Positions 39,616 through 59,504 of a stretch of DNA of 64,000 bases are shown here, one piece after another. The stretch covers positions 237,008 through 301,007 of the IMG/VR virus record IMGVR_UViG_3300036770_007539. One strand, given 5' to 3'. A program made the position numbers and the translations under genes. The notes under the pieces are model-generated. The model saw only the letters and a program-made list of their open reading frames with translations, made no database searches and was not told where the DNA came from. Position 1 is the first letter of the stretch, and each line of letters starts with the position of its first letter.

Positions 39616-39621
39616 ACGGCA

Positions 39622-45189: not shown

Positions 45190-45237
45190 GGCTTGGGGAC
45201 GCATCTGGGGCTGAACGGTCCTGGGTGCGTCCCCGAA

Positions 45238-45489: not shown

Positions 45490-45522
45490 TAGATCGCTTG
45501 TTTTCGCGCATATTCGCGCGCC

Positions 45523-45649
45523 TTGACAATCGGCGGATCGTTGCTAGTATGTAGGGTGTGAGAGAGAGCACGAACGAACGAATGAACGAACGAACGCTAG
45601 CACGACGCTAGCGCGATGCGTTTGACGCGGCTCGATTCGATGCTACGTT
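45523..45649 (+). promoter_or_regulatory. Tandem sigma70-like promoters, unit 5
   Basis: TTGACA 45523-N16-TAGTAT; TTGACG 45622-N16-TACGTT. Confidence 0.75.
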
Positions 45650-45683
45650 GCAAGTGTCGCCGATACATGGCGAGGGAGGCAAT

Positions 45684-46157
45684 ATGTGGATTGACCAGCG
45701 CGAGATCGACCGAGAGAACGAGAACTACAGCCTGGAGTCGCACCAGGAGGTAGTTCAGGAACAGGCTCGGAAAGAGATGATCGCGAGCTTGACCAAGCTC
45801 TGGGAGGAGACGGATCGCAAGATCGACGGCAAACGCGAAGCTCTCACGAGTGAGAGCTTCGACGAATACATCCGTCGGATCGCAGATGATAACGCCTATG
45901 AGAAGCGCGAAGCTCTCTCGGAGAAGCTCGGACGCAAACTCACCCGTGATGAGGAGCACGAAATCTTTCGCGAGGAGAAGGATAGCATCATTCAAAAGAT
46001 CAATGGCGAGATCGAGATCCTGGTCGCCAAGCTCGACATGATCGAAACGCAACTTCGCAGCCTGGGTGCTCGCAAGGCACGTCCTTACGAGCACTGGAAC
46101 GAGGAGGAGCACATCGTTCAGTATCTGGAAACCAGGAACGACAACCGCGACTACTGA
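45684..46157 (+). CDS. Acidic coiled-coil protein (paralog of 53676..54170)
   Basis: Shared LGAR..RPYEH.NE.E..YLE.R..NDR C-terminus. Confidence 0.7.
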   Translation: MWIDQREIDRENENYSLESHQEVVQEQARKEMIASLTKLWEETDRKIDGKREALTSESFDEYIRRIADDNAYEKREALSEKLGRKLTRDEEHEIFREEKDSIIQKINGEIEILVAKLDMIETQLRSLGARKARPYEHWNEEEHIVQYLETRNDNRDY

Positions 46158-46212
46158 ACCCAAGATCCCGGCTCGCCCTTCGGGGCGGGTCGGGTTCGAC
46201 AACGGAGGAATC

Positions 46213-46485
46213 ATGGAAAAGATTGCACGAGTGGTTGAGCACCCCGAAGCCCAAAAGTACGACCTGCGATGCAACTATCATCGGGGCGTCCTGGTGGACG
46301 TGCCTTCGGACAAGGTTCTGCGAGGGTACGATGGCGGTCTGTACGCCACCGTGGACGGTGAGTGGTACAGCGTTCATCCGTCCAATACTTCCAACCTGAT
46401 CGGAGCCCTGGGTATTCGATACCAGCTCCGAGAGGAAGGCTCGGAGGGAGACATGATCTCCTTCCTGCAAGCGCAAACCGACTGA
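46213..46485 (+). CDS. Hypothetical protein
   Basis: GGAGG RBS. Confidence 0.6.
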   Translation: MEKIARVVEHPEAQKYDLRCNYHRGVLVDVPSDKVLRGYDGGLYATVDGEWYSVHPSNTSNLIGALGIRYQLREEGSEGDMISFLQAQTD

Positions 46486-46587
46486 TCTGGACGGGCGAGC
46501 CCGCAAGGGCTCGCTCCCTGCAATCGGGATTCGATACGGATCGAATCTCGATTCTAGGGAATGTCCCCTAGCAACGGAGGTATTGTG

Positions 46588-46908
46588 ATGGGCAAACTGG
46601 CAGGATCGATGTGGAGGATCAATAAGTCGAGCATGGTGGTTCCCCTCCAGCCTGTCGAGGACGCGGATGCGTATTGGTTTGGCTATGCTGAACTTGACGA
46701 GGGAGACACGGTAATCATCCTCGGTGAACCGGTCCCCACGGTCGATTCAGACCCCGCTAAGAAGCACCACAGCTACGTCCCTGTCGAGTTTCGTAACGGT
46801 TACGCGCCTTTTTTCGGGTGGCGCAACGGTTATGTGTCCAACTACAAGGGTTACATGAACGCGACCTACTTCATCTGCGAATCTATCTGGATGGAGAGAG
46901 TAGGGTAA
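46588..46908 (+). CDS. Hypothetical protein (SH3-like?)
   Basis: GGAGG RBS after a switch-like leader. Confidence 0.55.
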   Translation: MGKLAGSMWRINKSSMVVPLQPVEDADAYWFGYAELDEGDTVIILGEPVPTVDSDPAKKHHSYVPVEFRNGYAPFFGWRNGYVSNYKGYMNATYFICESIWMERVG

Positions 46909-47018
46909 TATCCAGAACTAGGACGGGCGAGCCCGCAAGGGCTCGCTCCCTGCAATCGGGATTCGACACTTGTCGAGTTTCGATTCTAGGGAATGTCCCC
47001 TAGCACCAAGGAGGCTTT

Positions 47019-47270
47019 ATGCCGCTTTTCGTTTCTTTCCAGGATTCCAGCACCGATCCCACCTACGCGCTCGCCGATGATGTGGTCCTCGTCGAGAGCA
47101 GCGACGACGATGACAACAATCCTTGCGTCGGGCGCTCGGTTCGTCGCACCGCACCCGTCGCTCCGATGACGGCGGAAGAGATTCGCGCTTTCGCTATGGT
47201 CATGGGTTGGTCATGGGAGACGCACCGTGATGGGACACTGGTCCTATCTACGGGCGTCCAAGATATCTGA
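47019..47270 (+). CDS. Hypothetical protein (paralog of 42633..42890)
   Basis: Same leader and N-terminus. Confidence 0.7.
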   Translation: MPLFVSFQDSSTDPTYALADDVVLVESSDDDDNNPCVGRSVRRTAPVAPMTAEEIRAFAMVMGWSWETHRDGTLVLSTGVQDI

Positions 47271-47389
47271 TAGGAAGGGCGAGCCCTCGCAAGGGGGCTC
47301 GCTCCCTGCAATCGAACCTTGATGCCGAAAACATCGGAGCTATGTCAAGGTTCGATTCTAGGGATGTCCCTAGTGTTACGGAGGTTTCC

Positions 47390-47848
47390 ATGAACGACGA
47401 TTATCTGCACGTCAACCAGTTCAGCTTCAACTTCCGCCAGAATCAGTACGAGATCCTGGAACTCAAGGGTGTCAACATCTACGAAGATAGGACCATCTGG
47501 TGCTCTCATGCCGATGATGGGGAAGGCTGGGATGTATTCATCTGCTACCAGCCCGAAGATGACGACAATACTGGGACCATCAATCCTAGCCATCTCAACA
47601 AGTCTTGGGCTAAGAAGTTCAAGACTGAGATGCAAGAAGATCAGGACGGTGAACCCGCTCCTTGGAACATGGGCAGGAATCTGAGCATGAGCGAGGTTCA
47701 AAGCATGGTTCGCTACTTCAGGCGAAAGATACTGGTGGGTGTCCTTCGGCAGAAACGCGACCGTGAACTCGGTTACTGTGACGAGGATCTCAACCGAGAA
47801 AAGTGGTCCAACTACTGGATCGGCGAAGGCTATACCGAATACTACTGA
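47390..47848 (+). CDS. Hypothetical protein (paralog of 52511..52957)
   Basis: Shared GEGWDVFI.Y.PEDDD, SWAKKFKTEMQEDQDG, MVRYFRR. Confidence 0.75.
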   Translation: MNDDYLHVNQFSFNFRQNQYEILELKGVNIYEDRTIWCSHADDGEGWDVFICYQPEDDDNTGTINPSHLNKSWAKKFKTEMQEDQDGEPAPWNMGRNLSMSEVQSMVRYFRRKILVGVLRQKRDRELGYCDEDLNREKWSNYWIGEGYTEYY

Positions 47849-47902
47849 AACAACGCACCTGGGCATGTGTCTAAACTGCCCTTTTCTTGAAAGGAGAATG
47901 TC

Positions 47903-48193
47903 ATGAACAATGATTTTCGTGCTTCCATTCTTGCCGCTCGTGAAGATTGGCGCATATCCAATCTGATCAAAGCAATCCAGTCTCATCTGGACGGTGAGGA
48001 AATCTATCTTCCCCGATTCGAGGAAGATCAGCAGGGCGGTCATTTCGTGCTCTCGGAATGGATCAAGATCCCTGCTTCCCGAATCATGAGAATATTGGGA
48101 GTCGACCATCCCCGCGATTTGGGATGGGGGCGTGATGGTGAACCACCGACTCCGAATCCTTCGGCAATTCCTTTCAAAGGAGAATGTCAATGA
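47903..48193 (+). CDS. Hypothetical protein
   Basis: AAAGGAG RBS. Confidence 0.6.
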   Translation: MNNDFRASILAAREDWRISNLIKAIQSHLDGEEIYLPRFEEDQQGGHFVLSEWIKIPASRIMRILGVDHPRDLGWGRDGEPPTPNPSAIPFKGECQ

Positions 48194-48390
48194 ACGTGAA
48201 TGAGTTTCTGAAAGAGGCATTGGAGCCGCAACCTCAAATGCGCAAGGGGCAGCATTTCATCAATCGTCTTACGGTGGTGAAGCCCTGGCTATCTTACAAG
48301 CTCCAGCAGACAGGCTTGGATCCATACTACGTTGACAGCAAGCTGCCTGCTGCAATCCAATACACCGTAGAAAACTGGGATCTCTTCTAA
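48190..48390 (+). CDS. Hypothetical protein
   Basis: AAAGGAG RBS; ATGA coupling. Confidence 0.6.
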   Translation: MNVNEFLKEALEPQPQMRKGQHFINRLTVVKPWLSYKLQQTGLDPYYVDSKLPAAIQYTVENWDLF

Positions 48391-48400
48391 AAGAGATACC

Positions 48401-48461
48401 GCATCGACTGGTCCGCACCCGCAAGGGTGCGGAGGAGGTTCGATTCCTCCACGATGCACTA
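48401..48461 (+). ncRNA. Anticodon-less tRNA-like element 5
   Basis: GCATCG/CGATGC; CTGGT linker; GCAA hairpin; GGAGG-TTCGATT-CCTCC; ends ACTA. Confidence 0.75.
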
Positions 48462-48513
48462 AGCACACAAGCTGTTGCATTGGGCAATTGCAAGTGCTTT
48501 CGTGAGGTGAGTC

Positions 48514-48891
48514 ATGGATTTCGTTCTTTCCCGCAAGACTGGCAGCGACATGTACGGATTCTGCCCCCTTTTCCAGTCTTTGGTCATCGGGAATCTGCGC
48601 GTCTCCATCCAAGCGAGTCGAACCCACTTCTCCTCTCCCCAAGCAGACTTCTCCAACTCGGACTTGTATTCTGAGTTCGAAGTGGCGCTGCTGACGCTCC
48701 GAGATGGCAAGTGGTTTCATCCGGAGAAGGACAAGCGGTTCGCTCAAACCGAATGGGCAAAGTACTACTGGAAAGACTACGATGACGTAGCTGCTTACGT
48801 ACCGCGTCATCTGGTGGCGCAAATGATAACTGACCTGCGCTTGGATGCGGCTTCAAGGCGAAAGCGTATGAAGCCGATTGCCAAGAAGTGA
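48514..48891 (+). CDS. Hypothetical protein
   Basis: GAGGTG RBS; 125 aa. Confidence 0.65.
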   Translation: MDFVLSRKTGSDMYGFCPLFQSLVIGNLRVSIQASRTHFSSPQADFSNSDLYSEFEVALLTLRDGKWFHPEKDKRFAQTEWAKYYWKDYDDVAAYVPRHLVAQMITDLRLDAASRRKRMKPIAKK

Positions 48892-48956
48892 CCGCACAGC
48901 CTCTCGGCTCGCCCTTCGGGGCGGGTCGGGAGGCTTTTTTTTTTGCGAAGAAGTAG

Positions 48957-49210
48957 AGCGGCTTCGCCGCTCCAATGTTTCTATCAATTTCTTTTTTTCA
49001 AAGCCATATTCATTTCAATTTCAAAAACAAATCATTTCTTTGAAATCTATTCAGATTCAATTACAAGATACTTTGATTTCAAACAGTATCTTTGATCATC
49101 TTATTCCATACAATGTTTTTCCATTCTTTTCTAACAAAGCCAATGTAGCGCTGACATTCCGTCAATGGTTTTTGTCCCGTTTTTTGCCTTTTACCCCTTC
49201 GGGCTAGGGC
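48957..49210. repeat. AT-rich spacer element 5 (variant)
   Basis: GAGCGGC-TTC-GCCGCTC CAATG ... AGCCAATGTAGCGC ... GCTAGGGC. Confidence 0.7.
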
Positions 49211-49234
49211 AGAATACGTCTAAACGCACGCGAT

Positions 49235-49360
49235 TTGACAAGCGCAAGATCGTTGCTAGTATGTAGGGTGTGAGAACGAATGCGAACACGCAAACGCTCT
49301 CGTCGAGAGTAGCACGGCGCGATTGACAATGTTTGACAATCGCGGATTCGTGGCTACAAT
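49235..49360 (+). promoter_or_regulatory. Tandem sigma70-like promoters, unit 6
   Basis: TTGACA 49235-N16-TAGTAT; TTGACA 49333-N16-TACAAT. Confidence 0.8.
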
Positions 49361-49397
49361 ACAGATGCGGCAATCAAGCCGCGTTTCGGAGGTTGTC

Positions 49398-49853
49398 ATG
49401 TCCAACACGTTCAAGATCGATCCCTCGTTCCTCGTCAAGTTCGTTTCCTCCGTCGTGGATGCTGCGAACAAGCGGATTCCGGTCAAGGATCTGGCTGGAA
49501 TCCTGCAAAGGCTCGACAGCGATCAGGGGCGCGTGGCTGCGTCGTTCGACGCCGACGATCTGGAAAAGGTGATCGTCGGCACGGTCAACAACCTGCACGG
49601 ATTCGACATTCGTGCGGGTCGTTCGGGTGGCGTCGGGCGCGTGGAGATGTTCAAGGGTGGAGCATCCGACGAGCCGAGCGGTGTCGCCGCGCAGATCGCG
49701 GCACGTCTGCGTGAATACTGCAAGGCGGCTGGAAAGCCCTTGGAGATCCCCGAGTCCCGGCGGATCGTCAACGCTTACCTGAACGATCTGATCTTGCAGC
49801 AGGCACCGGGCAATCTGACGGCGGAGGATCTGCTGTCTCGATACGGCGGCTGA
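49398..49853 (+). CDS. Promoter-proximal protein (paralog of 51807..52232)
   Basis: Shared VDAAN.R.PV, RAGRSGGVGR, FKGG, NAYL. Confidence 0.75.
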   Translation: MSNTFKIDPSFLVKFVSSVVDAANKRIPVKDLAGILQRLDSDQGRVAASFDADDLEKVIVGTVNNLHGFDIRAGRSGGVGRVEMFKGGASDEPSGVAAQIAARLREYCKAAGKPLEIPESRRIVNAYLNDLILQQAPGNLTAEDLLSRYGG

Positions 49854-49982
49854 TCGGGTGAGGGAGCGAGCCTTTAGGGGCTCGCTCCCTGTAACCGAGG
49901 GTTGACACCGAAAACATCGGATCTATGTCAATCTTCGGTTACAGGGAGCAATTCCGCTATCCTGTATTCTGGGAGTGTTTGC

Positions 49983-50243
49983 ATGAGAATGCATGAGATT
50001 CTGGCACCGATCCGCGCGCACGCACGTCTCGCTCCGCTGGATCGTCTGTCCGTGGATGGTGCGAAGATCCTCGCCGACATGGTGTACGCCATGCGTGGCG
50101 CGGATCGTCGCTGTCAAGAGCACGCGGCGGATTGTCTCGCGGCTCTGCGTCCGCGTCTCTACGATCTCTGGGACGTGGCTCGCGCTGTCGAGCCGTGTCC
50201 AGAGTGGCTGAAGCCACTGGCGGAGTACGGTCCTCGACACTGA
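49983..50243 (+). CDS. Hypothetical protein
   Basis: GGGAG RBS after a switch-like leader. Confidence 0.55.
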   Translation: MRMHEILAPIRAHARLAPLDRLSVDGAKILADMVYAMRGADRRCQEHAADCLAALRPRLYDLWDVARAVEPCPEWLKPLAEYGPRH

Positions 50244-50316
50244 AACAAGGGCGGGGAACGAGCCCGAATGGGCTCGTTCCCCGCCTGTCTCTCATCTCAA
50301 ACCTGGAGGTTTTCAC

Positions 50317-50655
50317 ATGCGTATGCACCCCACTACTGCCATTCTCGTGACCCTCAACACCTTCGCCCGCGAATACGTCGAGTATTACGGAGGGGTGAAT
50401 CACCTGCTGGACGTTCCTGTTCTCGCGGAACAGGGGCGTGCGCTGGAGGCGGTCATCACCGCCATCTACAAGGGAATCGTCGATGGCAGTATCCCTGCCA
50501 ACGAGCGCACACGTCAAAGCGCGCAACAGTGGAGCGAGGGGTTGATTACCCTTCCAGAATCTCTGGCATTCCTGATCTCTGAGATGAAGCCGCCGAAAGG
50601 CATTCCCCTTCACGGTGAACGCTTGGCGGTCATTCTTGGAGGCTTCTTGCCTTAG
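50317..50655 (+). CDS. Hypothetical protein
   Basis: GGAGG RBS. Confidence 0.6.
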   Translation: MRMHPTTAILVTLNTFAREYVEYYGGVNHLLDVPVLAEQGRALEAVITAIYKGIVDGSIPANERTRQSAQQWSEGLITLPESLAFLISEMKPPKGIPLHGERLAVILGGFLP

Positions 50656-50802
50656 TCATCGACACGAGAGCGAGCCCTCGCAAGGGGCTCGCTCCCTGCA
50701 ATCGAACCTTGACGAGCACTTGTTGCTGTGATAACGTCAAGGTTCGATTCTAGGGGATTGACAATTCTGTGTGAGCTAACCTTTCCCTCAAAGGAGGTAT
50801 CA

Positions 50803-51237
50803 ATGAACATCGAAATCGACCCGATCAGCATGGCTCTCATCAAGAACCCTCGTGCCGTTGCCAAGGCGATGGTGGTCCTGTTTTCTTTCCAGACAGCTAA
50901 GGAGAGAAGCACGGGCATCACCAGGGAATCCAACGGCAAGGGCTTCTCTTCTTACGACGATAAGAAGTGCAGCCGCTACGCACGATGGATCCTCCGCATA
51001 AGTAACAACGCCTCTGACGAGGAGGTGCGGACCAAAATCCGCAACTACCTGACGCACGGTCATCAACCCAACAACCGTGACCTGACCGGTACTCATCTGG
51101 ATGACGCTCGTATGCGCTCTCTCAAGTACGTCGGTCAGCTGAAGCGGTATGCTGACAGCAAGAAGGCTGCCAGCGCGGCGGTCACTGCACCGGTCACGGC
51201 TCCTACGGAGGCGAATGATGCAGCTGACGATTCTTGA
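50803..51237 (+). CDS. Hypothetical protein
   Basis: AAGGAGG RBS. Confidence 0.65.
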   Translation: MNIEIDPISMALIKNPRAVAKAMVVLFSFQTAKERSTGITRESNGKGFSSYDDKKCSRYARWILRISNNASDEEVRTKIRNYLTHGHQPNNRDLTGTHLDDARMRSLKYVGQLKRYADSKKAASAAVTAPVTAPTEANDAADDS

Positions 51238-51293
51238 CTATCTGATCCGTAGCAATGCGGATTGTGTAGTCCAGCAAGCTTGGAAGTGAAAGT

Positions 51294-51333
51294 GAGCGAG
51301 TCCCTGGCAACGGGGGCTCGCTCCTTTTTTTTG
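51294..51333 (+). terminator. Rho-independent terminator
   Basis: GAGCGAG..CTCGCTC stem followed by a T tract. Confidence 0.7.
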
Positions 51334-51344
51334 TGGATTTTTCA

Positions 51345-51600
51345 GCGCTAGGGCGGCTTTGCCGCCCCAATGAGATCAATGTTTGGAGCCCGATCTATTC
51401 CAATGCCCTATTTCTATTCCAACAATGCTTCTATATTCTTCTATCTATCTCTCTTTGCTTCTTTCAATTCATTCTTACAATGAACTTAAACAATCTCTTC
51501 AATGATCAATGTTTGGAGCCAATGTAGGTTTTCCATTGTTTTGGGTGATTTTTAATCTCAGAATTGGTGATTTCCCGAAAAAATGCTTTTTAGCTAGGGC
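51345..51600. repeat. AT-rich spacer element 6 (variant)
   Basis: GGGCGGC-TTT-GCCGCCC CAATG; several CAATG boxes; AGCCAATGTAG; GCTAGGGC. Confidence 0.7.
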
Positions 51601-51624
51601 ATGTTGCGCGTATGGGCGCACGAT

Positions 51625-51652
51625 TTGACAAGCGGGGGATCGTTGCTAGTAT
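51625..51652 (+). promoter_or_regulatory. Sigma70-like promoter, unit 7
   Basis: TTGACA-N16-TAGTAT. Confidence 0.8.
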
Positions 51653-51806
51653 GCAAGGTGTGAGAGAGACGCTAACCGATACGCGATAACGCGATAGGGC
51701 AACGATACGCATTTTCGCGTGTTTATGTTGGCGTGGGCTGAAGCTAGGATTAAGCGATGGTTGCTTAATGCGTGTTTCAGTGGTTGTTTGTTATTCGAGG
51801 TGTATC

Positions 51807-52232
51807 ATGTTCAAGTTCGATTTTTCCGCCGTCCACAACGCTGTTGTTTCGCTCGTCGATGCTGCAAACCACCGCGTTCCGGTGGAGGGGCTTTCCAAGG
51901 ATTTGAAGGTTGCGGGATTCGATCTGGGTGAGGACGCGGACGTGGTTATCCGCGCAATTTGCGCGGCGTCTACGGTCGTGGATTTGCGGGCGGGTCGTTC
52001 TGGCGGCGTTGGTCGAAAGGAGTGGTTTAAGGGCGGGGCTAATCCTGAGCCTACGGGTGTGGGTGCAAAGATCGCCAAATCCATTCGTGAAACCGCTGGA
52101 ATTTCTCTTCCCAAGGGTGATGAGCGTTCGGCTTCTCTGGCAATTGCGAACGCATATCTGGAGGCATTGGCGACTGGAAAATGCGATCCAATGCCGCTGG
52201 CGGAGGTAATCAAGAAGTTCGGCAAGAGCTGA
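51807..52232 (+). CDS. Promoter-proximal protein (paralog of 49398..49853)
   Basis: Shared motifs as listed for 49398..49853. Confidence 0.75.
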   Translation: MFKFDFSAVHNAVVSLVDAANHRVPVEGLSKDLKVAGFDLGEDADVVIRAICAASTVVDLRAGRSGGVGRKEWFKGGANPEPTGVGAKIAKSIRETAGISLPKGDERSASLAIANAYLEALATGKCDPMPLAEVIKKFGKS

Positions 52233-52510
52233 AAAGCCAAGGGTTTGCGGTAATCCCATAAAACCGCTCATAGCTTGCCAACTAGAGTCCTTTCCATTAA
52301 CGTAAGTGGCGGATACGTCCTGTTTTTGGTGTAAATGGTCGCTCTATTATTAGAGTAGTTGGCGCACCTGGGTAAGTGTATAAACTGCCTTTTTCCGGCG
52401 AGGCGATTACCTATCAAATCGTCGGAACCAAAACTAAAAAGTTAGAATAACTGGGCTGGCTATTTTTATAATAGCTGGTCTTAGATACTCTCGACAAAAG
52501 AGGAAAAGTC

Positions 52511-52957
52511 ATGAAACAAATTTTGGACGTTGAGGATTTCACCTTTTCTCTCGAGCCGGATCGGTATGAGATTCTGAGTCTAAAAGGTGCAAATCTCTAC
52601 GAAGATCGAAACATCTGGCTTGAAAAAGCGGAAAATGGGGAAGGTTGGGATGTATTCATTACTTACCGACCGGAAGATGACGATAACCGTGGCAGCTACA
52701 ATCCTGTGGGATTGAATCGATCCTGGGCTAAAAAGTTCAAGACTGAAATGCAGGAAGATCAGGATGGTGAGGTTAAACCCTGGAATATGGGCAGTAATCT
52801 GACCACGGATGAAGTTAAGGGAATGGTTCGATATTTCCGCCGAACGGCATTGGTGGGGATATTGCGAGCCAAGCGGGATCGTGAGTGTTACGGTGAGGAT
52901 TTGGAAAAGGAGAAGTGGGACAATTACTGGGCGGGTGAGGGATATTCTGGGTATTGA
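52511..52957 (+). CDS. Hypothetical protein (paralog of 47390..47848)
   Basis: Long shared blocks. Confidence 0.75.
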   Translation: MKQILDVEDFTFSLEPDRYEILSLKGANLYEDRNIWLEKAENGEGWDVFITYRPEDDDNRGSYNPVGLNRSWAKKFKTEMQEDQDGEVKPWNMGSNLTTDEVKGMVRYFRRTALVGILRAKRDRECYGEDLEKEKWDNYWAGEGYSGY

Positions 52958-53083
52958 GGGTAAACACCTGGGTAAGTGTTAAAACTGCCTTTTTCCCTAG
53001 GATGCGATTACCTATCAATTCCTAGGGACCAAACAATCAGAAAAACCAATAACTGAGTGTTTTTCGGAACAAGGAGAAATCAA

Positions 53084-53395
53084 ATGACCTTGCATTATCT
53101 CATGGCGGAATATGTTGATTCTCAATCGTACATGCACAATAACAGCGAAGTTATTGGTGGTCCTGGGTATAAGGAAAAGCAAAAGAGGCATTTGCGAGCC
53201 TGCAAAAAGCTCCAGGAATACGTCATGAACAATCTTCCCGCTGAAGATAACTTCAGCATTTACAATGGGGAAACCGAGGAGCGTCTAGTTTCTTTAATTA
53301 AGGAAACTGGGGAAGAACTATTTTACTCGAACGCTTCATGCGGCACGCGAATCTGTAGGGATAAGTTTGGGTTGGTTTATGTATTCGGCGTGTAA
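53084..53395 (+). CDS. Hypothetical protein
   Basis: AAGGAG RBS. Confidence 0.6.
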   Translation: MTLHYLMAEYVDSQSYMHNNSEVIGGPGYKEKQKRHLRACKKLQEYVMNNLPAEDNFSIYNGETEERLVSLIKETGEELFYSNASCGTRICRDKFGLVYVFGV

Positions 53396-53410
53396 TAGAA
53401 GGAGAGAATC

Positions 53411-53566
53411 ATGAACGAACGTGTTAGGTTGATTCGTCGAAAGCTCATTGATTACACTTCGGAATCCGAGGAATTCAAGGATTTCTATTTGGTGATTGAG
53501 GGTCAAAAGCTGACATTCAGCAGAGCCGGTGAGACGATCGAAATCAACATCGAAGAAAAGAGTTGA
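53411..53566 (+). CDS. 51 aa protein (paralog of 54441..54611)
   Basis: MNE.V.L...QKLT...E.IEINI.EKS; hand-translated. Confidence 0.6.
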   Translation: MNERVRLIRRKLIDYTSESEEFKDFYLVIEGQKLTFSRAGETIEINIEEKS

Positions 53567-53675
53567 AGTTTACACCTGGACAAGTGGATAAACTGTCTTT
53601 TCCTAATGGTGAGATTACCTATCAATCCATTAGGACCAAACAATCAGAAAAACCAATAACTGAGAGGTTATCATC

Positions 53676-54170
53676 ATGGCAATGGCAAATGTTCGTGGTT
53701 ATGTGGTTGAGTCCGAAGATTCTGATAACGAGGATTCGGATCGCGAGGATTCGGATAACGAGATCAAGGCAGAAATCCGAAGGGAAATGATTGCCAAGCT
53801 CGCGAGGGAATGGAATCAAATCAATAACCGAATCGAAATCGAAAGTTTCGATGATGAGCTTCAAGGTCAAAGGGCGGATTATCATGCCGAAATGGCAGAT
53901 GAATACGTCCAAAACTGTCTTTATGGGCTTTTCAAGGAAAAGCCCAATGTAACTCCAGAGGAAAAGGCGGCTTTCATTGAAAAAGCCCAAAACGAATATT
54001 ACAAGAAAGTTTCCCAAGAGGAAAACAAGATTTATCTGCAGAAGCAGGTAATCGAGGAGCTTTTGGGAAATTTGGGTGCTCGAATGATGCGTCCTTATGA
54101 GCATCATAACGAGATGGAGGGTTATTACCGATATATGGAAAACCGATACAACAATGATCGGGATTGGTAA
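53676..54170 (+). CDS. Acidic coiled-coil protein (paralog of 45684..46157)
   Basis: Shared C-terminus. Confidence 0.7.
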   Translation: MAMANVRGYVVESEDSDNEDSDREDSDNEIKAEIRREMIAKLAREWNQINNRIEIESFDDELQGQRADYHAEMADEYVQNCLYGLFKEKPNVTPEEKAAFIEKAQNEYYKKVSQEENKIYLQKQVIEELLGNLGARMMRPYEHHNEMEGYYRYMENRYNNDRDW

Positions 54171-54234
54171 TAACTGAACAAACACCTAGGGTAAGTGTAT
54201 AAACTGCCCTTTTCCTAAAGGTTGGAGGTGCGAT

Positions 54235-54426
54235 ATGGGTTACGACATGAATCTCGGAAACATAAACTTCGAGAATATGGTAAAGCGAACGGCTCAAATG
54301 CTTTCCTTTGAGGTTTCCGTGGAGGATATTCGCGAAGCCCTAATCGCAGAAGGTTGCACGGAGGAGCAAGCGTATTTTGTTTATATTGCGGCAAAGTTGC
54401 TTCTTCGCGAGCCTGCAAACCCTTGA
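54235..54426 (+). CDS. Hypothetical protein
   Basis: GGAGG RBS. Confidence 0.6.
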   Translation: MGYDMNLGNINFENMVKRTAQMLSFEVSVEDIREALIAEGCTEEQAYFVYIAAKLLLREPANP

Positions 54427-54440
54427 AATAGGAGGAAATC

Positions 54441-54611
54441 ATGAATGAAAAGGTCAAACTTCTTCTCGAGAAAATCGTAGATTTCGTTACCTTGGAATCC
54501 GAGGATTTCGAGGACTACGACCTAATATGGGATAACCAAAAGGAACTTCAAAAGCTGACATTAATCGGTGCCAGCGAGAAGATCGAAATCAACATCCAAG
54601 AAAAGAGTTGA
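54441..54611 (+). CDS. 56 aa protein (paralog of 53411..53566)
   Basis: AGGAGG RBS; hand-translated. Confidence 0.6.
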   Translation: MNEKVKLLLEKIVDFVTLESEDFEDYDLIWDNQKELQKLTLIGASEKIEINIQEKS

Positions 54612-54698
54612 GGTTTACACCTAGGGTAAGTGTATAAACTACCCTTGTATAAACTGCCCTTTTCTTCATAAACCTTTCAAAGCAGAGGAAAAAAAGTC

Positions 54699-54974
54699 AT
54701 GAAGATCAGTTTTTGTCATCCCAGGAGCGCACACAAAACTGTTTACTTTTTTTTCGGTCGCCACAATGTTAGGGCTGGCTTTACAGTAAAGGATTCTAAC
54801 GGTTATCTGCCAATGATCCACTTTGGTTTCAATGAAAAAAGCGGGGATATTCGCTTGGGTGTGAGCTTTCAAAGTTACTTGATTTTGAAAGAGCGATTAC
54901 CCGTCTTGGCAGATGGAATCATGAAAGTTCAGAACAAGGCGAGAAAGTTGATTGATACTCGCTGGAAAGATTGA
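54699..54974 (+). CDS. Hypothetical protein
   Basis: 91 aa ORF. Confidence 0.55.
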   Translation: MKISFCHPRSAHKTVYFFFGRHNVRAGFTVKDSNGYLPMIHFGFNEKSGDIRLGVSFQSYLILKERLPVLADGIMKVQNKARKLIDTRWKD

Positions 54975-55025
54975 TCAGCTAAAAGCTGAAGTTTGACACC
55001 TAAGCATGTGTATAAACTGCTTTAC

Positions 55026-55098
55026 GGGTCCATAACTCAATTGGTAGAGTAGCTGGCTTTTAACCAGTTTGTTGGCAGTTCGACCCTGCCTGGACCCA
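55026..55098 (+). tRNA. trnK: tRNA-Lys(UUU)
   Basis: GGGTCCA/TGGACCC acceptor; anticodon loop CTTTTAA; GGCAG-TTCGACC-CTGCC. Confidence 0.9.
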
Positions 55099-55246
55099 CA
55101 AAGAAAAAGACAAATCTAAAAGAGGAAAACATGAAAATCCTGGTATTGAACGATTCTGCGGAGGAGATTCTTTTGGCATTGAAGCCATAGATTGAAAACA
55201 CGGTTACATGCACAAGTAACTTCCTCAAACATTTGAGGGATGGAAA

Positions 55247-55966
55247 ATGAAAGCAAGAATCCTAAGTGACCTACATTTTGAGTTTTCTCAAGACCAAGGA
55301 AAGGATTTTATTGCCAATCAAAACGATTCGGACTATGATCTTTTGATTTTGGCAGGCGATATTGCTCCTGTAGGAATCTTGCTGTCTGTTTTCCAGAAGT
55401 TTCGGAAAGCGGCTGGCAATCGACCTATTGTATTCGTTCCCGGCAATCATGAATATTATCATTCCAGCTTGGAAGAAGCTAACAATATCTTCTCTCAGCT
55501 TGATGAGATTCATGTTTTGAACGGAAATGTTGTCAATATCGGGGATGTGCGAATTGTGGGAACTACCTTGTGGTTTCCTCATTCTGGAATGATGCAAGCC
55601 TCTGATTATCAAATCAATGATTTCCATAAGATTTCTGATTTGAATCAGTGGCTAAATCACCGATCTAGGTGGGAGGCTAACTTCCTAAATCAAAACATCC
55701 AAGAGAATGACATAGTGGTAACTCATTATCTGCCTTGTTATGACTCGGTGGATGATAAGTTCAAGAACAGCAATCTCAACAAATACTTTGTTCATAACGT
55801 AAAGCCTTTGGTTGAGGATTGCGGAGTTAAACTTTGGGTTCATGGTCATACCCATTCTTCTGTGGATTACACTTTGGGTTCTACCAGGGTGGTTTGTAAT
55901 CCCTGTGGATATCCTGGGCATGATTTGAATCTGAACTTTAACAACCGCCTAACCATTGATCTTTAA
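55247..55966 (+). CDS. Calcineurin-like metallophosphoesterase
   Basis: LSDLHFE, LAGDI, VPGNHEYY, VTHYLP, WVHGHTH, VVCNP.GY. Confidence 0.9.
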   Translation: MKARILSDLHFEFSQDQGKDFIANQNDSDYDLLILAGDIAPVGILLSVFQKFRKAAGNRPIVFVPGNHEYYHSSLEEANNIFSQLDEIHVLNGNVVNIGDVRIVGTTLWFPHSGMMQASDYQINDFHKISDLNQWLNHRSRWEANFLNQNIQENDIVVTHYLPCYDSVDDKFKNSNLNKYFVHNVKPLVEDCGVKLWVHGHTHSSVDYTLGSTRVVCNPCGYPGHDLNLNFNNRLTIDL

Positions 55967-56062
55967 TGACATGGTGGCAATGTCTTAGGTTCCCACTTAT
56001 CCTATAAAAGTGGAAGTTTCTCCTATTACCCAAAACACACCCATTAACAAACAAAGGTAAAT

Positions 56063-56482
56063 ATGAACAAAGCAGCTTCTTTGTACGATTCGGCAGCAAA
56101 CCTTATTTCCGCCAAAGCCGTTTATTGGCTTAATAACCATCGTTTGCAACTCCTGAATCTTAAGAATAGCGAAATTACCCGACGTTTGAGCAGTTACAAT
56201 ATGGGTTGGATTTCGGCTATCTCGATTCTCGAGCATTTTAGCTTTCTTCAATCCTTGGACGAAGAATTCATGAATCATCGGGAATATCAAATTCTGTGTG
56301 ATTCCTGGTTTGCTTCTCATGATGCAGCTTTGGTTGAATGGGCAAAGATGGAATTTGAGCAATTGGCTCAAGTTGCAAAGGAAGATATGGAGGGAATTAC
56401 TAAAGACTCAATTTCCCCCCGAGCCGCACAACAGCTTTTTGATACAGTTCGCATCAGAAACTTTAAGGGTCTGGCTGCGTAA
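56063..56482 (+). CDS. Hypothetical protein
   Basis: 139 aa ORF. Confidence 0.6.
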   Translation: MNKAASLYDSAANLISAKAVYWLNNHRLQLLNLKNSEITRRLSSYNMGWISAISILEHFSFLQSLDEEFMNHREYQILCDSWFASHDAALVEWAKMEFEQLAQVAKEDMEGITKDSISPRAAQQLFDTVRIRNFKGLAA

Positions 56483-56546
56483 AGGTAAAGATTCACCTGG
56501 GCATGTGGATAAACTGCCCTTTCCCCCAACATAAAAACGAGGCTTT

Positions 56547-56726
56547 ATGAACAACGATTCTACTCAGTTTCAGTTTACTTGCTGTGATTCTTGTTTTCAG
56601 AAGTCTGTTTGTACCGTTCATTATTACAACGGTATTCCTGTAATTGCTACCTGCAAAACCTGCGATCTTCGTGCCTTCCAAAATAAGGCTTCTCAGCAAA
56701 TCAATCAATGGCTAATCGGTAAGTAA
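56547..56726 (+). CDS. 59 aa Cys-rich protein
   Basis: CCDSC..C..CKTC; hand-translated. Confidence 0.5.
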   Translation: MNNDSTQFQFTCCDSCFQKSVCTVHYYNGIPVIATCKTCDLRAFQNKASQQINQWLIGK

Positions 56727-56736
56727 AGATAAAACC

Positions 56737-56922
56737 ATGCGTAATTACCAAGAATCCCTCAATCGTTTGATTTGTGACATGACTTCTCTAAAGCGCGTTT
56801 ATGAGTGTACGCATCCAAAGACAAATGATACTTTTGTGGAATTGGTGGAGGATAACGTAACCACTCGATATCGTTGGGATATTGAAGATGGGTTTATATC
56901 TTGCGGCGAAGTTTTATTTTGA
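56737..56922 (+). CDS. Hypothetical protein
   Basis: 61 aa ORF. Confidence 0.5.
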   Translation: MRNYQESLNRLICDMTSLKRVYECTHPKTNDTFVELVEDNVTTRYRWDIEDGFISCGEVLF

Positions 56923-56934
56923 AGGTTGAAGGGC

Positions 56935-56962
56935 TTGACAAGAAAATTTCCCGTGTTATGTT
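56935..56962 (+). promoter_or_regulatory. Sigma70-like promoter
   Basis: TTGACA-N16-TATGTT with extended TG. Confidence 0.7.
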
Positions 56963-57080
56963 AGCTTGGTTGGCGGATATCCCTAAACCGCCCGTTTAAT
57001 ATCAAAAGCCTACAAGAAGGATATTAAATGTAAATTTGACTTGTGGGCAGACCTGGGTAAGTCTAAAACTGCCCTTTAAT

Positions 57081-57164
57081 GTCGCTGTGGTGGAATCGGC
57101 AGACACGATTGACTCAAAATCAATTGATAGTAATATCGTATCAGTTCAAGTCTGATCAGCGACA
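57081..57164 (+). tRNA. trnL: tRNA-Leu(CAA)
   Basis: GTCGCTG/CAGCGAC; ATTGA-CTCAAAA-TCAAT; long variable arm; TTCAAGT T-loop. Confidence 0.9.
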
Positions 57165-57200
57165 CAAATTCTCAAGTAACCCAATCCAAAGGATAAAGCA

Positions 57201-59039: not shown

Positions 59040-59068
59040 TTGACGGGGAAAAGAAAGAGTGTTATAGT
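59040..59068 (+). promoter_or_regulatory. Sigma70-like promoter upstream of tRNA-Leu(UAA)
   Basis: TTGACG-N17-TATAGT. Confidence 0.7.
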
Positions 59069-59105: not shown

Positions 59106-59397
59106 GCCTAGGTAGCCCAAAGGCAGGAGGCAGGGGACTTAAAAAATTGAGTGCTCCTTGGGAAACTAAGGAAGTAGAACTGCTCAAATTCGGTGAAACT
59201 CTCTGAAAGGAGACAATACCGAGCCAAGCAAATCGAAAGATTTGAAGGTGTAGAGACTAGACGGGCAGGGTCTAAGGCAATAATCAAATTGCTATGATCA
59301 AGGTATAGTCCAGACCACAACTCAAGAAATTGAGCCTGGTGTGAATCAGGGTGGTAAGAAAATCCCTACAGTGTGGGTTCGAATCCCACCCTAGGCA
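59106..59397 (+). tRNA. trnL: tRNA-Leu(UAA), split: exon 1 59106-59140, exon 2 59359-59397
   Basis: GCCTAGG/CCTAGGC acceptor; spliced anticodon arm GGGGA-CTTAAAA-TCCCT; GTGGG-TTCGAAT-CCCAC. Confidence 0.9.
59141..59358 (+). ncRNA. Group I intron (IC3-like, 218 nt, no ORF) in the tRNA-Leu(UAA) anticodon
   Basis: P AAATTCGGTGAAAC, Q AATACCGAGCC, R AGAGACTAGA, S AAGGTATAGTCC; terminal G; inserted after U34. Confidence 0.9.
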
Positions 59398-59504
59398 CTA
59401 ATGTAGGATAAAGTAGTAAAGTAATAAAGGCGCTGGTTATGATGAAAAATCAAATTAGCGCCTTTATTCTTAGCATCAAGTTTGTCTGAAAAGGAGTTAA
59501 TACC

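What the first reader, a model, noticed from the sequence alone, without database searches (positions are those of the whole stretch)
59106..59397. Phage tRNA-Leu(UAA) with a cyanobacterial/plastid-type group I intron
Seen: a 218-nt intron after U34, with P, Q, R and S elements and a start (AAAAAATTGAG) like the trnL(UAA) IC3 intron; no homing endonuclease. Known: this intron site is classic for cyanobacteria and plastids. Inference: horizontal spread via phages, and splicing-gated supply of a UUA-reading tRNA for AT-rich late genes.
Basis: partly seen in the sequence, partly recalled or inferred. Interest (0 to 1): 0.65.

Follow-up and report, generated by a model that had tools for sequence, protein, structure and literature searches.

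The report
Phage tRNA-Leu gene with self-splicing intron
A large phage carries a leucine tRNA gene interrupted in its anticodon loop by an intact-looking self-splicing (group I) RNA intron; this arrangement proves common in phage sequence databases, yet annotation pipelines miss it and I found no paper describing it.

Summary
Window 59106-59397 (+) is a split tRNA gene: 5' exon 59106-59140, a 218-nt group I intron 59141-59358, and 3' exon 59359-59397. Rfam RF00028 scores 59.9 bits (cut-off 50, E 1e-12).

All helices P1-P9.1, the U.G wobble at the 5' splice site, omega-G, and a GAAA loop with its 11-nt receptor are present. The fold covaries across 108 related introns.

The label 'cyanobacterial/plastid-type' is too narrow. 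The same intron at the same site occurs in at least 102 IMG/VR viral loci and in many bacterial phyla. The window's nearest relatives are viral (79% identity, against at most 68% for cyanobacteria).

Two uncultured huge-phage records and the cultured Agrobacterium phage Atu_ph07 carry unannotated copies.

The spliced tRNA is unusual. It has only a 5-nt variable loop, a shape seen in 17 of 102 viral copies and 0 of 65 bacterial copies.

UUA is the phage's main leucine codon, common in structural genes and rare in the ORFs around the tRNA. This fits codon supply. Nothing supports 'splicing-gated' control. Splicing and charging are inferred, not shown.

The parts
59040..59068 (+). Sigma-70-like promoter TTGACG - 17 nt - TATAGT with a TG extension, followed by AGTGGTGTG. 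This is the same promoter family as eight repeated promoters in the GC-rich block upstream.
   Evidence: 10 of 12 matches; promoter-like sites overall are at chance level in that scan. Family resemblance judged by eye against repeats D4/D10. Function is inferred.
59106..59140 (+). 5' exon: acceptor 5' strand, a 3-bp D stem with an 11-nt D loop, the anticodon-stem 5' strand, and C32 U33 U34.
   Evidence: ARAGORN with introns allowed; sequence read.
59141..59358 (+). 218-nt group I (IC3-type) intron with no ORF. It ends with omega-G at 59358.
   Evidence: Rfam RF00028, 59.9 bits, E 1e-12. Covariation on 108 homologues. 97 of 104 family-conserved columns are kept.
59137..59152 (+). P1: exon ACUU plus intron AA, paired with UUGAGU (the internal guide). 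The U59140.G59149 wobble marks the 5' splice site.
   Evidence: Rfam alignment. U.G in 107 of 108 sequences (columns 12/50).
59155..59172 (+). P2 hairpin (7 bp) with a GAAA tetraloop (L2).
   Evidence: All 7 pairs covary in the family (helix 3).
59180..59185 (+). P3 5' strand; pairs with 59263-59268.
   Evidence: 6 of 6 pairs covary, 99.7% of cells paired (helix 4).
59190..59222 (+). P4 (element P 59190-59195 with element Q 59217-59222), enclosing P5 (59200-59213, GAAA loop).
   Evidence: P4 is 99.7% paired (helix 5). P5 pairs in the window itself but aligns poorly with the family.
59223..59249 (+). P6 (2 bp) and P6a (6 bp, GAAA loop).
   Evidence: helices 7 and 8 (6 of 6 pairs covary in P6a).
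59253..59268 (+). Element R: P7 5' strand (59253, 59255-59259), then P3 3' strand (59263-59268). Contains the core GTAGAGACTAGACGG.
   Evidence: P7 columns are invariant in 108 sequences. The 19-mer was used as the scan pattern.
59269..59299 (+). P8 with an 11-nt GAAA-tetraloop receptor variant (UCUAAG ... UAUGA). This is the presumed docking site of L2.
   Evidence: Helices 10 and 11 covary. The receptor was recognised by eye against the canonical CCUAAG...UAUGG motif, from established knowledge.
59306..59311 (+). Element S: P7 3' strand (TAGTCC), the guanosine-binding helix.
   Evidence: Invariant columns; 100% paired (helix 9).
59314..59355 (+). P9.0 (59314-59318 with 59351-59355), enclosing P9 (59321-59334, GAAA loop) and P9.1 (59335-59350).
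   Evidence: P9.0 is 97% paired with 4 covarying pairs (helix 12). P9 and P9.1 are lineage-specific hairpins that pair in the window.
59359..59397 (+). 3' exon: A35 A36 A37 A38, anticodon-stem 3' strand, a 5-nt variable loop (ACAGU), the T arm, the acceptor 3' strand and discriminator A73. CCA is not encoded; the next bases are CUA.
   Evidence: AAAATC is invariant in the family.
59426..59469 (+). Possible terminator: a 9-bp hairpin (59426-59434 with 59457-59465, 22-nt loop), followed by a T-rich run.
   Evidence: Seen by eye. The terminator scan did not call it because the loop exceeds its limit. Weak.
57081..57165 (+). Neighbouring intron-less tRNA-Leu(CAA), of ordinary class-II shape with a long variable arm.
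55026..55099 (+). Neighbouring tRNA-Lys(UUU).

Best explanation
This is a functional phage tRNA gene for anticodon UAA, split after U34 by a self-splicing IC3 group I ribozyme.

The gene appears to be its own small transcription unit, driven by a sigma-70-like promoter at 59040-59068. In the precursor, the intron folds into P1-P9.1. A free guanosine bound at P7 attacks the bond after U59140, which the U.G wobble in P1 selects. Omega-G (59358) then enters the G site, and the 5' exon's 3' end attacks the bond after it, joining U34 to A35. RNase P, 3' trimming and CCA addition by host enzymes would then yield a 74-nt tRNA (77 nt with CCA).

That tRNA reads UUA, and probably UUG. UUA is the most used leucine codon of this 33% GC phage, so the tRNA would support translation of its AT-rich structural genes.

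The intron itself is most likely a tolerated passenger. It has no endonuclease, it is absent from close homologues, and it travels with a phage-borne family of tRNA-Leu(UAA) genes.

The tRNA body is a phage-typical variant without the long variable arm. It keeps A73, U8, A14, A15/U48, G18G19 and a 3-bp D stem, and is therefore probably still charged with leucine.

Shown here: the sequence, the fold, conservation and covariation, the family's distribution, and codon usage. Inferred: transcription, splicing, processing, leucine charging, and neutrality of the intron.
For: Rfam 59.9 bits, E 1e-12. Every core helix pairs in the window.

Across 108 homologous introns, 87.9% of cells are paired, against 31-40% when partners are slid. 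The covariation score is 0.373 against 0.05-0.09, and 0 of 500 shuffles reach it. 97 of 104 columns conserved at 90% or more are kept, and all 7 deviations lie in peripheral P5/P9. The splice-site residues are family invariants.

The exon-exon anticodon stem covaries (helix 1). This pairing is required for Anabaena intron splicing according to Zaug et al. 1993, listed in the references of PMC3984707; the requirement itself is from my own knowledge.

The family is abundant in viruses: 102 of 197 viral loci fetched with two core patterns carry tRNA-Leu(UAA) with an intron after U34. It is also present in huge-phage record LR756501, its duplicate LR756503 (hit only), and cultured phage Atu_ph07.

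Intron-less relatives of the same short tRNA occur in DNA contigs of freshwater metagenomes and in viral loci.

Codon usage: UUA is 39.6 per 1000 codons genome-wide. It is 44% of Leu codons in structural genes, against 10% in the ORFs around the tRNA.

Removing the variable arm from a bacterial tRNA-Leu mainly lowers affinity for LeuRS. Identity rests on A73 and tertiary pairs (PMC2377443).
Against: No RNA data are available: no listed run holding this DNA is RNA. Splicing, processing and charging are therefore untested.

The tRNA lacks the long variable arm that defines bacterial tRNA-Leu, so leucine identity is an assumption.

The gene lies in a compositionally odd terminal part of the contig (GC 0.36-0.64) whose own ORFs hardly use UUA.

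Promoter-like sites occur at chance frequency in the local scan, and the terminator is not canonical.

P5, P9 and P9.1 differ from the family consensus.
Confidence: 0.75

Rival explanations
1. Splicing-gated control: the intron acts as a timer or switch. Mature tRNA(UAA) would appear only when GTP, Mg2+ or a phage or host factor allows splicing, which would couple late-gene translation to the infection stage.
For: UUA-rich structural genes against UUA-poor ORFs next to the tRNA show that demand for this tRNA differs between gene sets. The gene has an early-looking sigma-70-type promoter.
Against: There is no evidence of regulation. Characterised tRNA group I introns (Anabaena, Azoarcus) self-splice efficiently without factors (established knowledge). 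Close homologues of the tRNA exist without the intron, so the intron is dispensable. The same codon pattern is explained by plain codon supply.
Confidence: 0.08
2. Anti-defence adaptation: the intron in the anticodon loop, the loss of the variable arm, or both, make the phage's UUA reader (or its precursor pool) resistant to host tRNA-cleaving defence nucleases. Translation would then continue after host tRNA-Leu is destroyed.
For: Class-I-shaped 'Leu' tRNAs are seen only in viral loci in this sample: 17 of 102 intron-bearing copies against 0 of 65 bacterial ones. Intron-less short Leu tRNAs with UAG, CAA, GAG and UAA anticodons also occur in viral loci. One library paper's abstract reports that the Septu defence system cleaves the variable loop of tRNA-Tyr (PMC13096335, listed).
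Against: No defence nuclease specific for tRNA-Leu or its variable arm was identified here. The mature spliced tRNA has a normal anticodon loop. Most phage copies (85 of 102) keep the long arm. This is purely inferential.
Confidence: 0.1
3. Decaying or non-functional locus: either the ribozyme no longer splices, or the exons no longer make a usable tRNA. In that case the missing variable arm would be a deletion in a pseudogene.
For: The window's intron sits on a long branch (0.44 substitutions per site). It deviates from consensus in P5 and P9/P9.1. The variable arm is missing.
Against: All core pairings and invariant residues are intact. The deviating regions still form clean GAAA-capped hairpins. 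The acceptor stem (7 bp), anticodon stem and T stem (5 bp each) pair without a mismatch apart from one G.U, and only the D stem is short (3 bp). The same short shape recurs in 17 independent viral loci with compensatory changes. A 95%-similar intron-bearing allele is present in an unrelated freshwater study (X7 record 29).
Confidence: 0.05
4. The spliced tRNA is charged with an amino acid other than leucine, or by a phage-encoded synthetase. That would make it a recoding tRNA for UUA/UUG.
For: The class-I shape and a D arm (UAGCCCAAAGGCAGGAGGC) unlike the canonical Leu D arm (UGGYGGAAUUGGUAGAC). Body-similarity ranking against 653 tRNAs gives no clear isotype.
Against: A73, A14, A15-U48, G18G19 and the 3-bp D stem match known Leu identity features (PMC2377443). 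Some short viral Leu tRNAs keep the typical Leu D arm. Structural proteins with recognisable families use UUA heavily, so a changed meaning would probably be harmful. This last point was inferred, not checked column by column.
Confidence: 0.02

Closest known systems
[quoted passage not shown] Anabaena PCC 7120; Xu et al. 1990 and Kuhsel et al. 1990, cited in PMC3984707)
   Same: Same ribozyme class (IC3) and the same insertion site between U34 and A35. Same exon context (ACUU | AAAAUC), a similar 5' start (AAAAUUGAG) and the same R and S cores. No endonuclease gene.
   Different: Only 49-68% identity (median 57%) to the eight cyanobacterial copies sampled. Cyanobacteria form a separate clade (support 99), although the window's place is not resolved (AU p 0.36). 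The host genome is a phage. The tRNA lacks the long variable arm. P6 is short, and P9/P9.1 are different.
Phage-borne tRNA-Leu(UAA) introns found here in IMG/VR contigs, in uncultured huge-phage records LR756501/LR756503 (735 kb) and in Agrobacterium phage Atu_ph07. All are unannotated.
   Same: Same site and same fold. These are the nearest relatives by identity (up to 79%, or 90% over aligned columns). 17 of 102 share the short-variable-loop tRNA body.
   Different: The window's P1 loop, P5 and P9/P9.1 are its own: its exact 5' junction 19-mer is found in no viral contig. LR756501 and Atu_ph07 have normal long-arm tRNA-Leu. The Atu_ph07 intron is 278 nt with an enlarged P8.
Azoarcus tRNA-Ile(CAU) and Agrobacterium tRNA-Arg(CCU) IC3 introns (Reinhold-Hurek and Shub 1992; structure papers such as PMC13168695)
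   Same: A compact IC3 architecture of about 200 nt, with a GAAA L2 docking into an 11-nt receptor in P8, a GAAA L9, and an identical AGGUGUAGAGACUAGACGG core (comparison from my own knowledge of the Azoarcus sequence).
   Different: Those introns are inserted 3' of the anticodon (after position 36) in other tRNAs. The probable Azoarcus-type clade, labelled Met(CAU) by ARAGORN, is the most distant group in the tree (support 100).
Classical phage group I introns in protein-coding genes (T4 td, nrdB, nrdD; Twort; mycobacteriophage capsid introns, PMC3706429)
   Same: Group I ribozymes carried by phages. This same phage has at least three of them in its major head protein gene.
   Different: Those introns interrupt ORFs, often encode homing endonucleases (here LAGLIDADG), and belong to other subgroups. 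The 2014 review states that all phage introns known then were in protein-coding genes (PMC3984707).
Lak megaphage tRNA introns (Devoto et al., bioRxiv 10.1101/356790)
   Same: Introns inside tRNA genes of very large phages, noticed because the genes are over-long.
   Different: Those introns were reported as 'enigmatic' and were placed with a eukaryotic tRNAscan model. They lie in Phe, Gly, Thr and Tyr tRNAs. The passages I read describe an Rfam test but assign no class.

Membership tests
Group I intron (Rfam RF00028) | Conserved catalytic core P3-P8 with the P, Q, R and S elements, scoring above the curated threshold | tested here: met
   59.9 bits against a gathering score of 50, E 1.1e-12, full model 1-253. 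Core helices are 99-100% paired in the family.
Group I intron (Rfam RF00028) | U.G wobble pair in P1 at the 5' splice site, and a terminal guanosine (omega-G) at the 3' splice site | tested here: met
   U59140.G59149 and G59358. Both are invariant or nearly invariant in 108 homologues.
Group I intron (Rfam RF00028) | Guanosine-binding helix P7 forming a pseudoknot with P3 | tested here: met
   P7 59253, 59255-59259 with 59306-59311. Five of six pairs are invariant and all pair (helix 9).
Group I intron (Rfam RF00028) | GTP-dependent self-splicing | not testable with these tools
   No RNA run holds the locus. Needs an in vitro assay.
IC3 tRNA-anticodon-loop introns (Anabaena/Azoarcus type) | Compact architecture without a P5abc extension; L2 GAAA with an 11-nt receptor in P8; L9 GAAA; P9.0 | tested here: met
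   L2 GAAA 59162-59165. Receptor UCUAAG...UAUGA lies in P8. L9 GAAA 59326-59329. P9.0 is 5 bp. The subgroup was assigned by comparison with known structures from my own knowledge, not by a subgroup-specific model.
tRNA-Leu(UAA) intron lineage | Insertion between U34 and A35 of a tRNA with anticodon UAA, with exon context CUU | AAAAUC | tested here: met
Cyanobacterial/plastid clade of the tRNA-Leu(UAA) intron | Phylogenetic placement inside the cyanobacterial/plastid clade | tested here: inconclusive
   The free tree puts the window outside the cyanobacterial clade (support 99) among viral and proteobacterial introns. Identity to cyanobacteria is at most 68%, against 79% to viral copies. The AU test does not reject window plus cyanobacteria (p 0.36). 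No plastid sequences were available.
Bacterial tRNA-Leu (class II tRNA) | Long variable arm (more than 10 nt) | tested here: not met
   The variable loop is 5 nt (ACAGU, 59368-59372) and the mature length is 74 nt. The class II definition is as given in PMC2377443.
Bacterial tRNA-Leu (class II tRNA) | Leucine identity elements: A73, U8-A14, A15-U48, G18G19 to the T loop, a 3-bp D stem | tested here: met
   All are present in the sequence. Elements are as listed in PMC2377443. Presence of these elements does not prove charging.
Bacterial tRNA-Leu (class II tRNA) | Aminoacylation with leucine | not testable with these tools
   Needs an in vitro charging assay or tRNA sequencing of charged species.
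Mobile group I intron (with homing endonuclease) | An intron-encoded or adjacent homing endonuclease gene | tested here: not met
   No ORF in the 218-nt intron on the + strand. The 70-aa TTG ORF on the minus strand (59108-59320) was not scanned against families. Flanking ORFs have no LAGLIDADG, GIY-YIG or HNH hits.

The most novel reading that the evidence does not exclude
[quoted passage not shown] In phages, the intron-bearing gene may have evolved into a distinct class-I-shaped leucine tRNA that evades host tRNA-directed defences. If so, the long-debated 'ancient intron shared by cyanobacteria and plastids' would be one branch of a phage-circulated element.
Probability: 0.15. Interest if true: 0.8.

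Novelty: new member of a known kind. Interest (0 to 1): 0.5.

Why it matters
The tRNA-Leu(UAA) intron is the textbook example of an 'ancient' group I intron. How it came to be scattered among bacteria without a homing endonuclease has stayed open.

A 2014 review states that every phage group I intron known then sat in a protein-coding gene (PMC3984707).

This locus, and the 100 or more viral loci recovered from it, show that phages routinely carry the intron inside their own tRNA-Leu(UAA) genes. Standard pipelines miss these genes: bacterial-mode tRNA finders skip them, and Rfam failed on LR756501 and Atu_ph07. Phage tRNA inventories are therefore undercounted. In Atu_ph07, part of the gene is mis-annotated as a hypothetical protein.

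A cultured carrier (Atu_ph07 on A. tumefaciens C58) makes splicing, charging and intron transfer directly testable.

The class-I-shaped leucine tRNAs seen only in viral loci are a second lead, bearing on tRNA identity and on phage-host conflict.

Tried and rejected
- Expression evidence: the look-up of sequencing runs returned no RNA run, so splicing could not be observed. It showed a 95%-similar intron-bearing allele and intron-less relatives. The joints are short-sided (29-35 nt) and marked 'between: not known', so they are only suggestive.
- Placing the intron phylogenetically: the quick ML tree leaves the window on a long branch in a polytomy, and the AU test is inconclusive. I therefore do not claim it is non-cyanobacterial by descent, only that its nearest sequences are viral.
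- Close relatives by exact 5' junction 19-mer: none in IMG/VR.
- Rfam on the homologous introns of LR756501 and Atu_ph07: no hit. The family model is not sensitive for these.
- Isotype of the short tRNA body by similarity to 653 tRNAs from fetched loci: no clear signal.
- A first splice-aware parser used a wrong S-element regex and undercounted. It was corrected.
- ARAGORN's raw intron calls labelled many copies Tyr(ata), Ser(aga), Phe(gaa) and others. The 14 'Tyr(ata)' and several other long-arm calls turned out to be boundary mis-parses of tRNA-Leu(UAA). Some other labels, such as Met(CAU) and Arg(CCU/UCU), are probably real.
- ARAGORN's tRNA-Ala(cgc) and tRNA-Trp(cca) calls with huge introns in the window are rejected as tRNAs. 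They end on anticodon-less tRNA-like elements.
- Chimeric assembly as the cause of the GC jump: considered. An independent Logan contig bridges the junction, and repeat families span both sides. It cannot be fully excluded, because the data probably come from the same site.
- The joined (spliced) exon sequence was used only inside local scripts (ARAGORN, ViennaRNA). It was not sent to any database or search tool. External searches used referenced, unspliced stretches or short core patterns, and the database search with the joined sequence was left out.
- The large protein searches, structure prediction and complex prediction were not used. The finding is an RNA gene and they would not bear on it.
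Full report
**What is there**

The window is the last 64 kb of a 301,007-bp linear IMG/VR virus record, estimated 71% complete. It encodes virion structural and collagen-like tail-fibre proteins, so it is a jumbo phage.

At 59106-59397 on the + strand, Rfam finds a full-length group I intron. The match is RF00028 at 59131-59336, 59.9 bits against a gathering score of 50, E 1.1e-12.

Default ARAGORN sees only tRNA-Lys(UUU) at 55026-55099 and tRNA-Leu(CAA) at 57081-57165.
- 5' exon 59106-59140
- intron 59141-59358
- 3' exon 59359-59397

The exons joined in a local script give a 74-nt cloverleaf. The intron holds no ORF on the + strand, and no flanking ORF has an endonuclease domain.

**Anatomy of the ribozyme**

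Intron position n corresponds to window coordinate 59140+n. I mapped these elements:
- **P1:** exon ACUU plus intron AA with UUGAGU; U59140.G59149 wobble at the 5' splice site.
- **P2:** 15-21/26-32, GAAA loop.
- **P3:** 40-45/123-128.
- **P4:** 50-55/77-82 (elements P and Q).
- **P5:** 60-64/69-73, GAAA loop.
- **P6/P6a:** 83-84/108-109 and 89-94/99-104, GAAA loop.
- **P7:** 113, 115-119/166-171 (elements R and S).
- **P8:** 129-132, 136-141/148-153, 156-159, with an 11-nt GAAA-receptor variant UCUAAG...UAUGA.
- **P9.0:** 174-178/211-215.
- **P9:** 181-185/190-194, GAAA loop.
- **P9.1:** 195-198/207-210.
- **omega-G:** 59358.

All these pairs are standard pairs in the window.

I projected this structure onto an alignment of 108 distinct tRNA-Leu(UAA) introns from viral and bacterial loci (A1). 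The results:
- 87.9% of cells are paired, against 31-40% when partners are slid by 1-3 columns.
- The covariation score is 0.373, against 0.05-0.09 for the slid versions.
- None of 500 shuffles reaches the observed values.
- P2, P3, P6a, P8 and the exon-exon anticodon stem covary strongly. P7 is almost invariant.

The window keeps 97 of the 104 columns that are at least 90% conserved. The seven exceptions all lie in peripheral P5 and P9/P9.1, where the window has its own clean hairpins. The G of the U.G wobble, omega-G and the AAAATC that follows are invariant, and the splice-site U is nearly so (107 of 108). By every sequence criterion, this looks like an active IC3-type ribozyme. Activity itself is inferred.

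**How common it is, and who its relatives are**

The R-core 19-mer AGGTGYAGAGACTNGACGG occurs in at least 119 IMG/VR contigs and at least 120 GTDB genome contigs. A second pattern, the S element plus the P9.0 strand, again hit at least 119 viral contigs.

A splice-aware parse required CUU | intron ending in G | AAAAUC, with the joined exons then checked by ARAGORN. It finds tRNA-Leu(UAA) with an intron after U34 in 102 of 197 viral loci and 65 of 120 bacterial loci. The bacterial carriers include Alphaproteobacteria, Acidobacteriota, Bacteroidota, Chloroflexota, Nitrospirota and Cyanobacteriota. The site is therefore not specific to cyanobacteria.

Identity of the window's intron to each group:

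| Group | Median | Maximum |
|---|---|---|
| Viral, long-arm tRNA | 74% | 79% |
| Bacterial, non-cyanobacterial | 67% | 74% |
| Cyanobacterial | 57% | 68% |

In a maximum-likelihood tree, the cyanobacterial introns form a clade (support 99) that excludes the window. The window sits on a long branch (0.44) in an unresolved group of viral introns. An AU test does not reject forcing the window together with cyanobacteria (p 0.36). I therefore call the lineage question open.

Several virus-bacterium sister pairs in the tree are compatible with exchange between phages and hosts, for example L105/L242 (support 100) and L068 with Burkholderia loci. Prophages, or bacterial DNA in viral contigs, could also produce such pairs.

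**Unannotated copies in published phage genomes**

The uncultured 735-kb huge phage LR756501 has a tRNA-Leu(UAA) with a 205-nt intron. The cultured Agrobacterium jumbo phage Atu_ph07 has one with a 278-nt intron (MF403008.1, about 112,890-113,251). There the 3' part is annotated as a hypothetical protein.

Rfam detects neither copy. Neither genome paper contains the word 'intron' (PMC7162821; PMC6102473).

A 2014 review states that all phage group I introns then known were in protein-coding genes (PMC3984707). The Lak megaphage preprint calls its tRNA introns enigmatic and previously unreported in phages (10.1101/356790). My literature searches found no description of group I introns in phage tRNA genes. 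The library does not hold most subscription journals, so this is absence from what I could search, not proof of novelty.

**The tRNA is not an ordinary tRNA-Leu**

The layout is: acceptor GCCUAGG/CCUAGGC; U8 A9; a 3-bp D stem with an 11-nt loop; anticodon stem GGGGA/UCCCU; loop CUUAAAA; variable loop ACAGU (5 nt); T arm GUGGG-UUCGAAU-CCCAC; A73. No CCA is encoded.

Bacterial tRNA-Leu is class II, with a long variable arm (PMC2377443), so this defining feature is not met.

The same short shape (73-75 nt) occurs in 17 of the 102 viral intron-bearing copies and in none of the 65 bacterial ones. That gives roughly p = 2e-4 if the loci were independent, which they are not fully. Short 'Leu' tRNAs without introns also occur in viral loci, with anticodons UAG, CAA, GAG and UAA. 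Some of these keep a typical Leu D arm.

DNA contigs from freshwater metagenomes show intron-less relatives of the window's short tRNA, with UAA and CAA anticodons (loose ends at 59359).

The window's tRNA keeps A73, U8-A14, A15-U48 and G18G19, all known Leu identity elements. In Aquifex, deleting the variable arm mainly lowers affinity. I therefore think leucine charging is likely, but it is untested. Similarity ranking of the tRNA body gave no clear isotype.

**Function and context**

The genome is 33% GC over most of its length. UUA is its commonest leucine codon: 39.6 per 1000 codons, and 29-59% of Leu codons in the 20-kb bins up to 260 kb (44% or more in most). Codon usage differs sharply between gene sets within the window:

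| Gene set | UUA share of Leu | UUA per 1000 | AAA share of Lys |
|---|---|---|---|
| Structural and tail genes (0.4-30 kb) | 44% | 33 | 82% |
| Small + strand ORFs around the tRNAs (52.5-63.6 kb) | 10% | 8.9 | 39% |
| GC-rich block ORFs (33-52 kb) | 2% | 1.6 | 18% |

The phage's tRNA-Leu(UAA) and tRNA-Lys(UUU) thus match the codons of the bulk and structural genes, not of their own neighbourhood.

The gene has a sigma-70-like promoter (TTGACG-17-TATAGT, 59040-59068). Its downstream AGTGGTGTG resembles eight repeated promoters in the GC-rich block. This suggests early transcription by the host polymerase, which is an inference.

Nothing speaks for splicing acting as a gate. The intron is absent from close relatives, and comparable introns self-splice constitutively (established knowledge).

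**Caveats**

- There is no RNA evidence.
- The tRNA lies in a compositionally aberrant terminal 31 kb. An independent Logan contig bridges the AT-rich tail-fibre genes into the GC-rich block, and repeat families link that block to the tRNA region. A chimeric join is therefore unlikely, but not excluded.
- The joined exon sequence was analysed only in local scripts and was not submitted to any search tool. That step was left out.

**Verdict**

This is a real, intact-looking IC3 group I intron in a phage tRNA(UAA) gene. It is a new member of a known kind. The family proves widespread in phage databases, and I found no paper describing it in phage tRNA genes. The tRNA body is an unusual class-I shape.

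Interest is moderate. It rests on the phage reservoir for a classic intron, the annotation blind spot, and the short-arm leucine tRNAs.

Noticed in passing
window 33000-52300 (+ strand): A 19-kb GC-rich block (GC 0.49-0.65) inside a 33% GC phage. It carries eight copies of one conserved sigma-70-like promoter (TTGACAAG...GATCGTTGCTAGTATGTAGGGTGTGAGA) at 33228, 35431, 35505, 38715, 41477, 45520, 49232 and 51622. It also has many repeated GNRA-capped GC hairpins and terminator-like CTAGGG...CCCTAG elements, and small + strand ORFs with host-like codon usage (GC3 0.67, UUA 2% of Leu). Pfam hits there include Metallophos, STIV_B116-like and AAA_33.
   Followed up: partly
window 33642-33699, 34542-34611, 36246-36312, 39617-39687, 48385-48461 (+): Five tRNA-like structures without an anticodon. 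Each has a 6-7-bp acceptor stem, a GG-containing D region or D hairpin, a stable hairpin in place of the anticodon arm (GCAA or UUGC tetraloop in three; six-base loops in TLS1 and TLS4), a canonical T arm (GGUUCGAUUCC), A73, then CCA or CUA. Those I read in sequence (TLS1-3) sit next to small ORFs. MFE folds agree. Rfam has no match. ARAGORN with introns mis-called two of them as tRNA-Ala and tRNA-Trp with huge introns. They might be RNase P/Z processing signals or tRNA mimics. A pattern scan found 75 viral contigs, 66 of which were ordinary tRNAs, and a few similar anticodon-less elements.
   Followed up: partly
window 44745-57077, nine copies (e.g. 54981-55024 and 57034-57077): A conserved ~30-44-nt element (CACCTGGGTAAGTGTATAAACTGCCCTTT). 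It lies immediately 5' of tRNA-Lys(UUU) and tRNA-Leu(CAA), and before several small ORFs, but not before the intron-bearing tRNA-Leu(UAA). It could be a phage-specific promoter or a processing site (families D5/D11/D14).
   Followed up: no
genome G000:C1:129400-133000 (loci L001, L003, L004; outside the window): The major head protein gene (phrog_2522) is split into at least three exon pieces by group I introns. Rfam gives 75 bits at 129690-129938, with weaker hits at 130850-131010 and 132408-132533. Two LAGLIDADG homing-endonuclease ORFs lie there (L001:2011-2802, L003:791-1594).
   Followed up: partly
L398 1495-1856 = MF403008.1 ~112,890-113,251 (minus strand), Agrobacterium phage Atu_ph07: An unannotated tRNA-Leu(UAA) with a 278-nt group I intron after U34, in a cultured 490-kb phage. 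GenBank places a 'hypothetical protein' CDS (AUZ94936.1) over its 3' part. Rfam cmscan finds nothing there even at E 0.01. The same holds for LR756501 at 190,2xx-190,5xx (L005 1473-1763).
   Followed up: yes
viral loci L030, L049, L065, L083, L096, L124, L269, L293, L304, L310, L321: Intron-less tRNAs with leucine anticodons (UAG, CAA, GAG, UAA) but only 73-78 nt, so without the long variable arm. Several keep the typical Leu D arm (GGAAUUGGUA). None was seen among the 41 tRNAs in the bacterial loci. This suggests that class-I-shaped leucine tRNAs are a recurrent phage feature.
   Followed up: partly
window 32540-33000 (+): A purine-rich tandem array with an 11-nt period (GGATAGAATAC / GGATAGGAGTG variants, about 40 units), sitting exactly at the AT-rich to GC-rich transition (D1/D2).
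   Followed up: no
window 30000-32310: Four ORFs (three on the minus strand, one on the plus) in a stretch with extreme strand composition: GC skew -0.66, with the + strand almost free of G. They have no family hits and an unusual Leu codon mix (UUA 34%, UUG 35%).
   Followed up: no
window 25695-29921 (-): Two adjacent paralogous ~700-aa tail-fibre proteins with collagen triple-helix repeats and a C-terminal Laminin_G_3 (concanavalin-like) domain. A glycosyltransferase-methyltransferase fusion gene lies next to them at 23355-24629 (+).
   Followed up: no
viral loci: The same IC3 core also interrupts other phage tRNA genes according to ARAGORN: Arg(UCU), Met/Ile(CAU), Lys(UUU/CUU) and possibly suppressor-like anticodons (UCA, CUA). 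About 35 of 120 viral hits are not in any tRNA and are presumably in protein-coding genes. The isotype calls were not individually verified.
   Followed up: no
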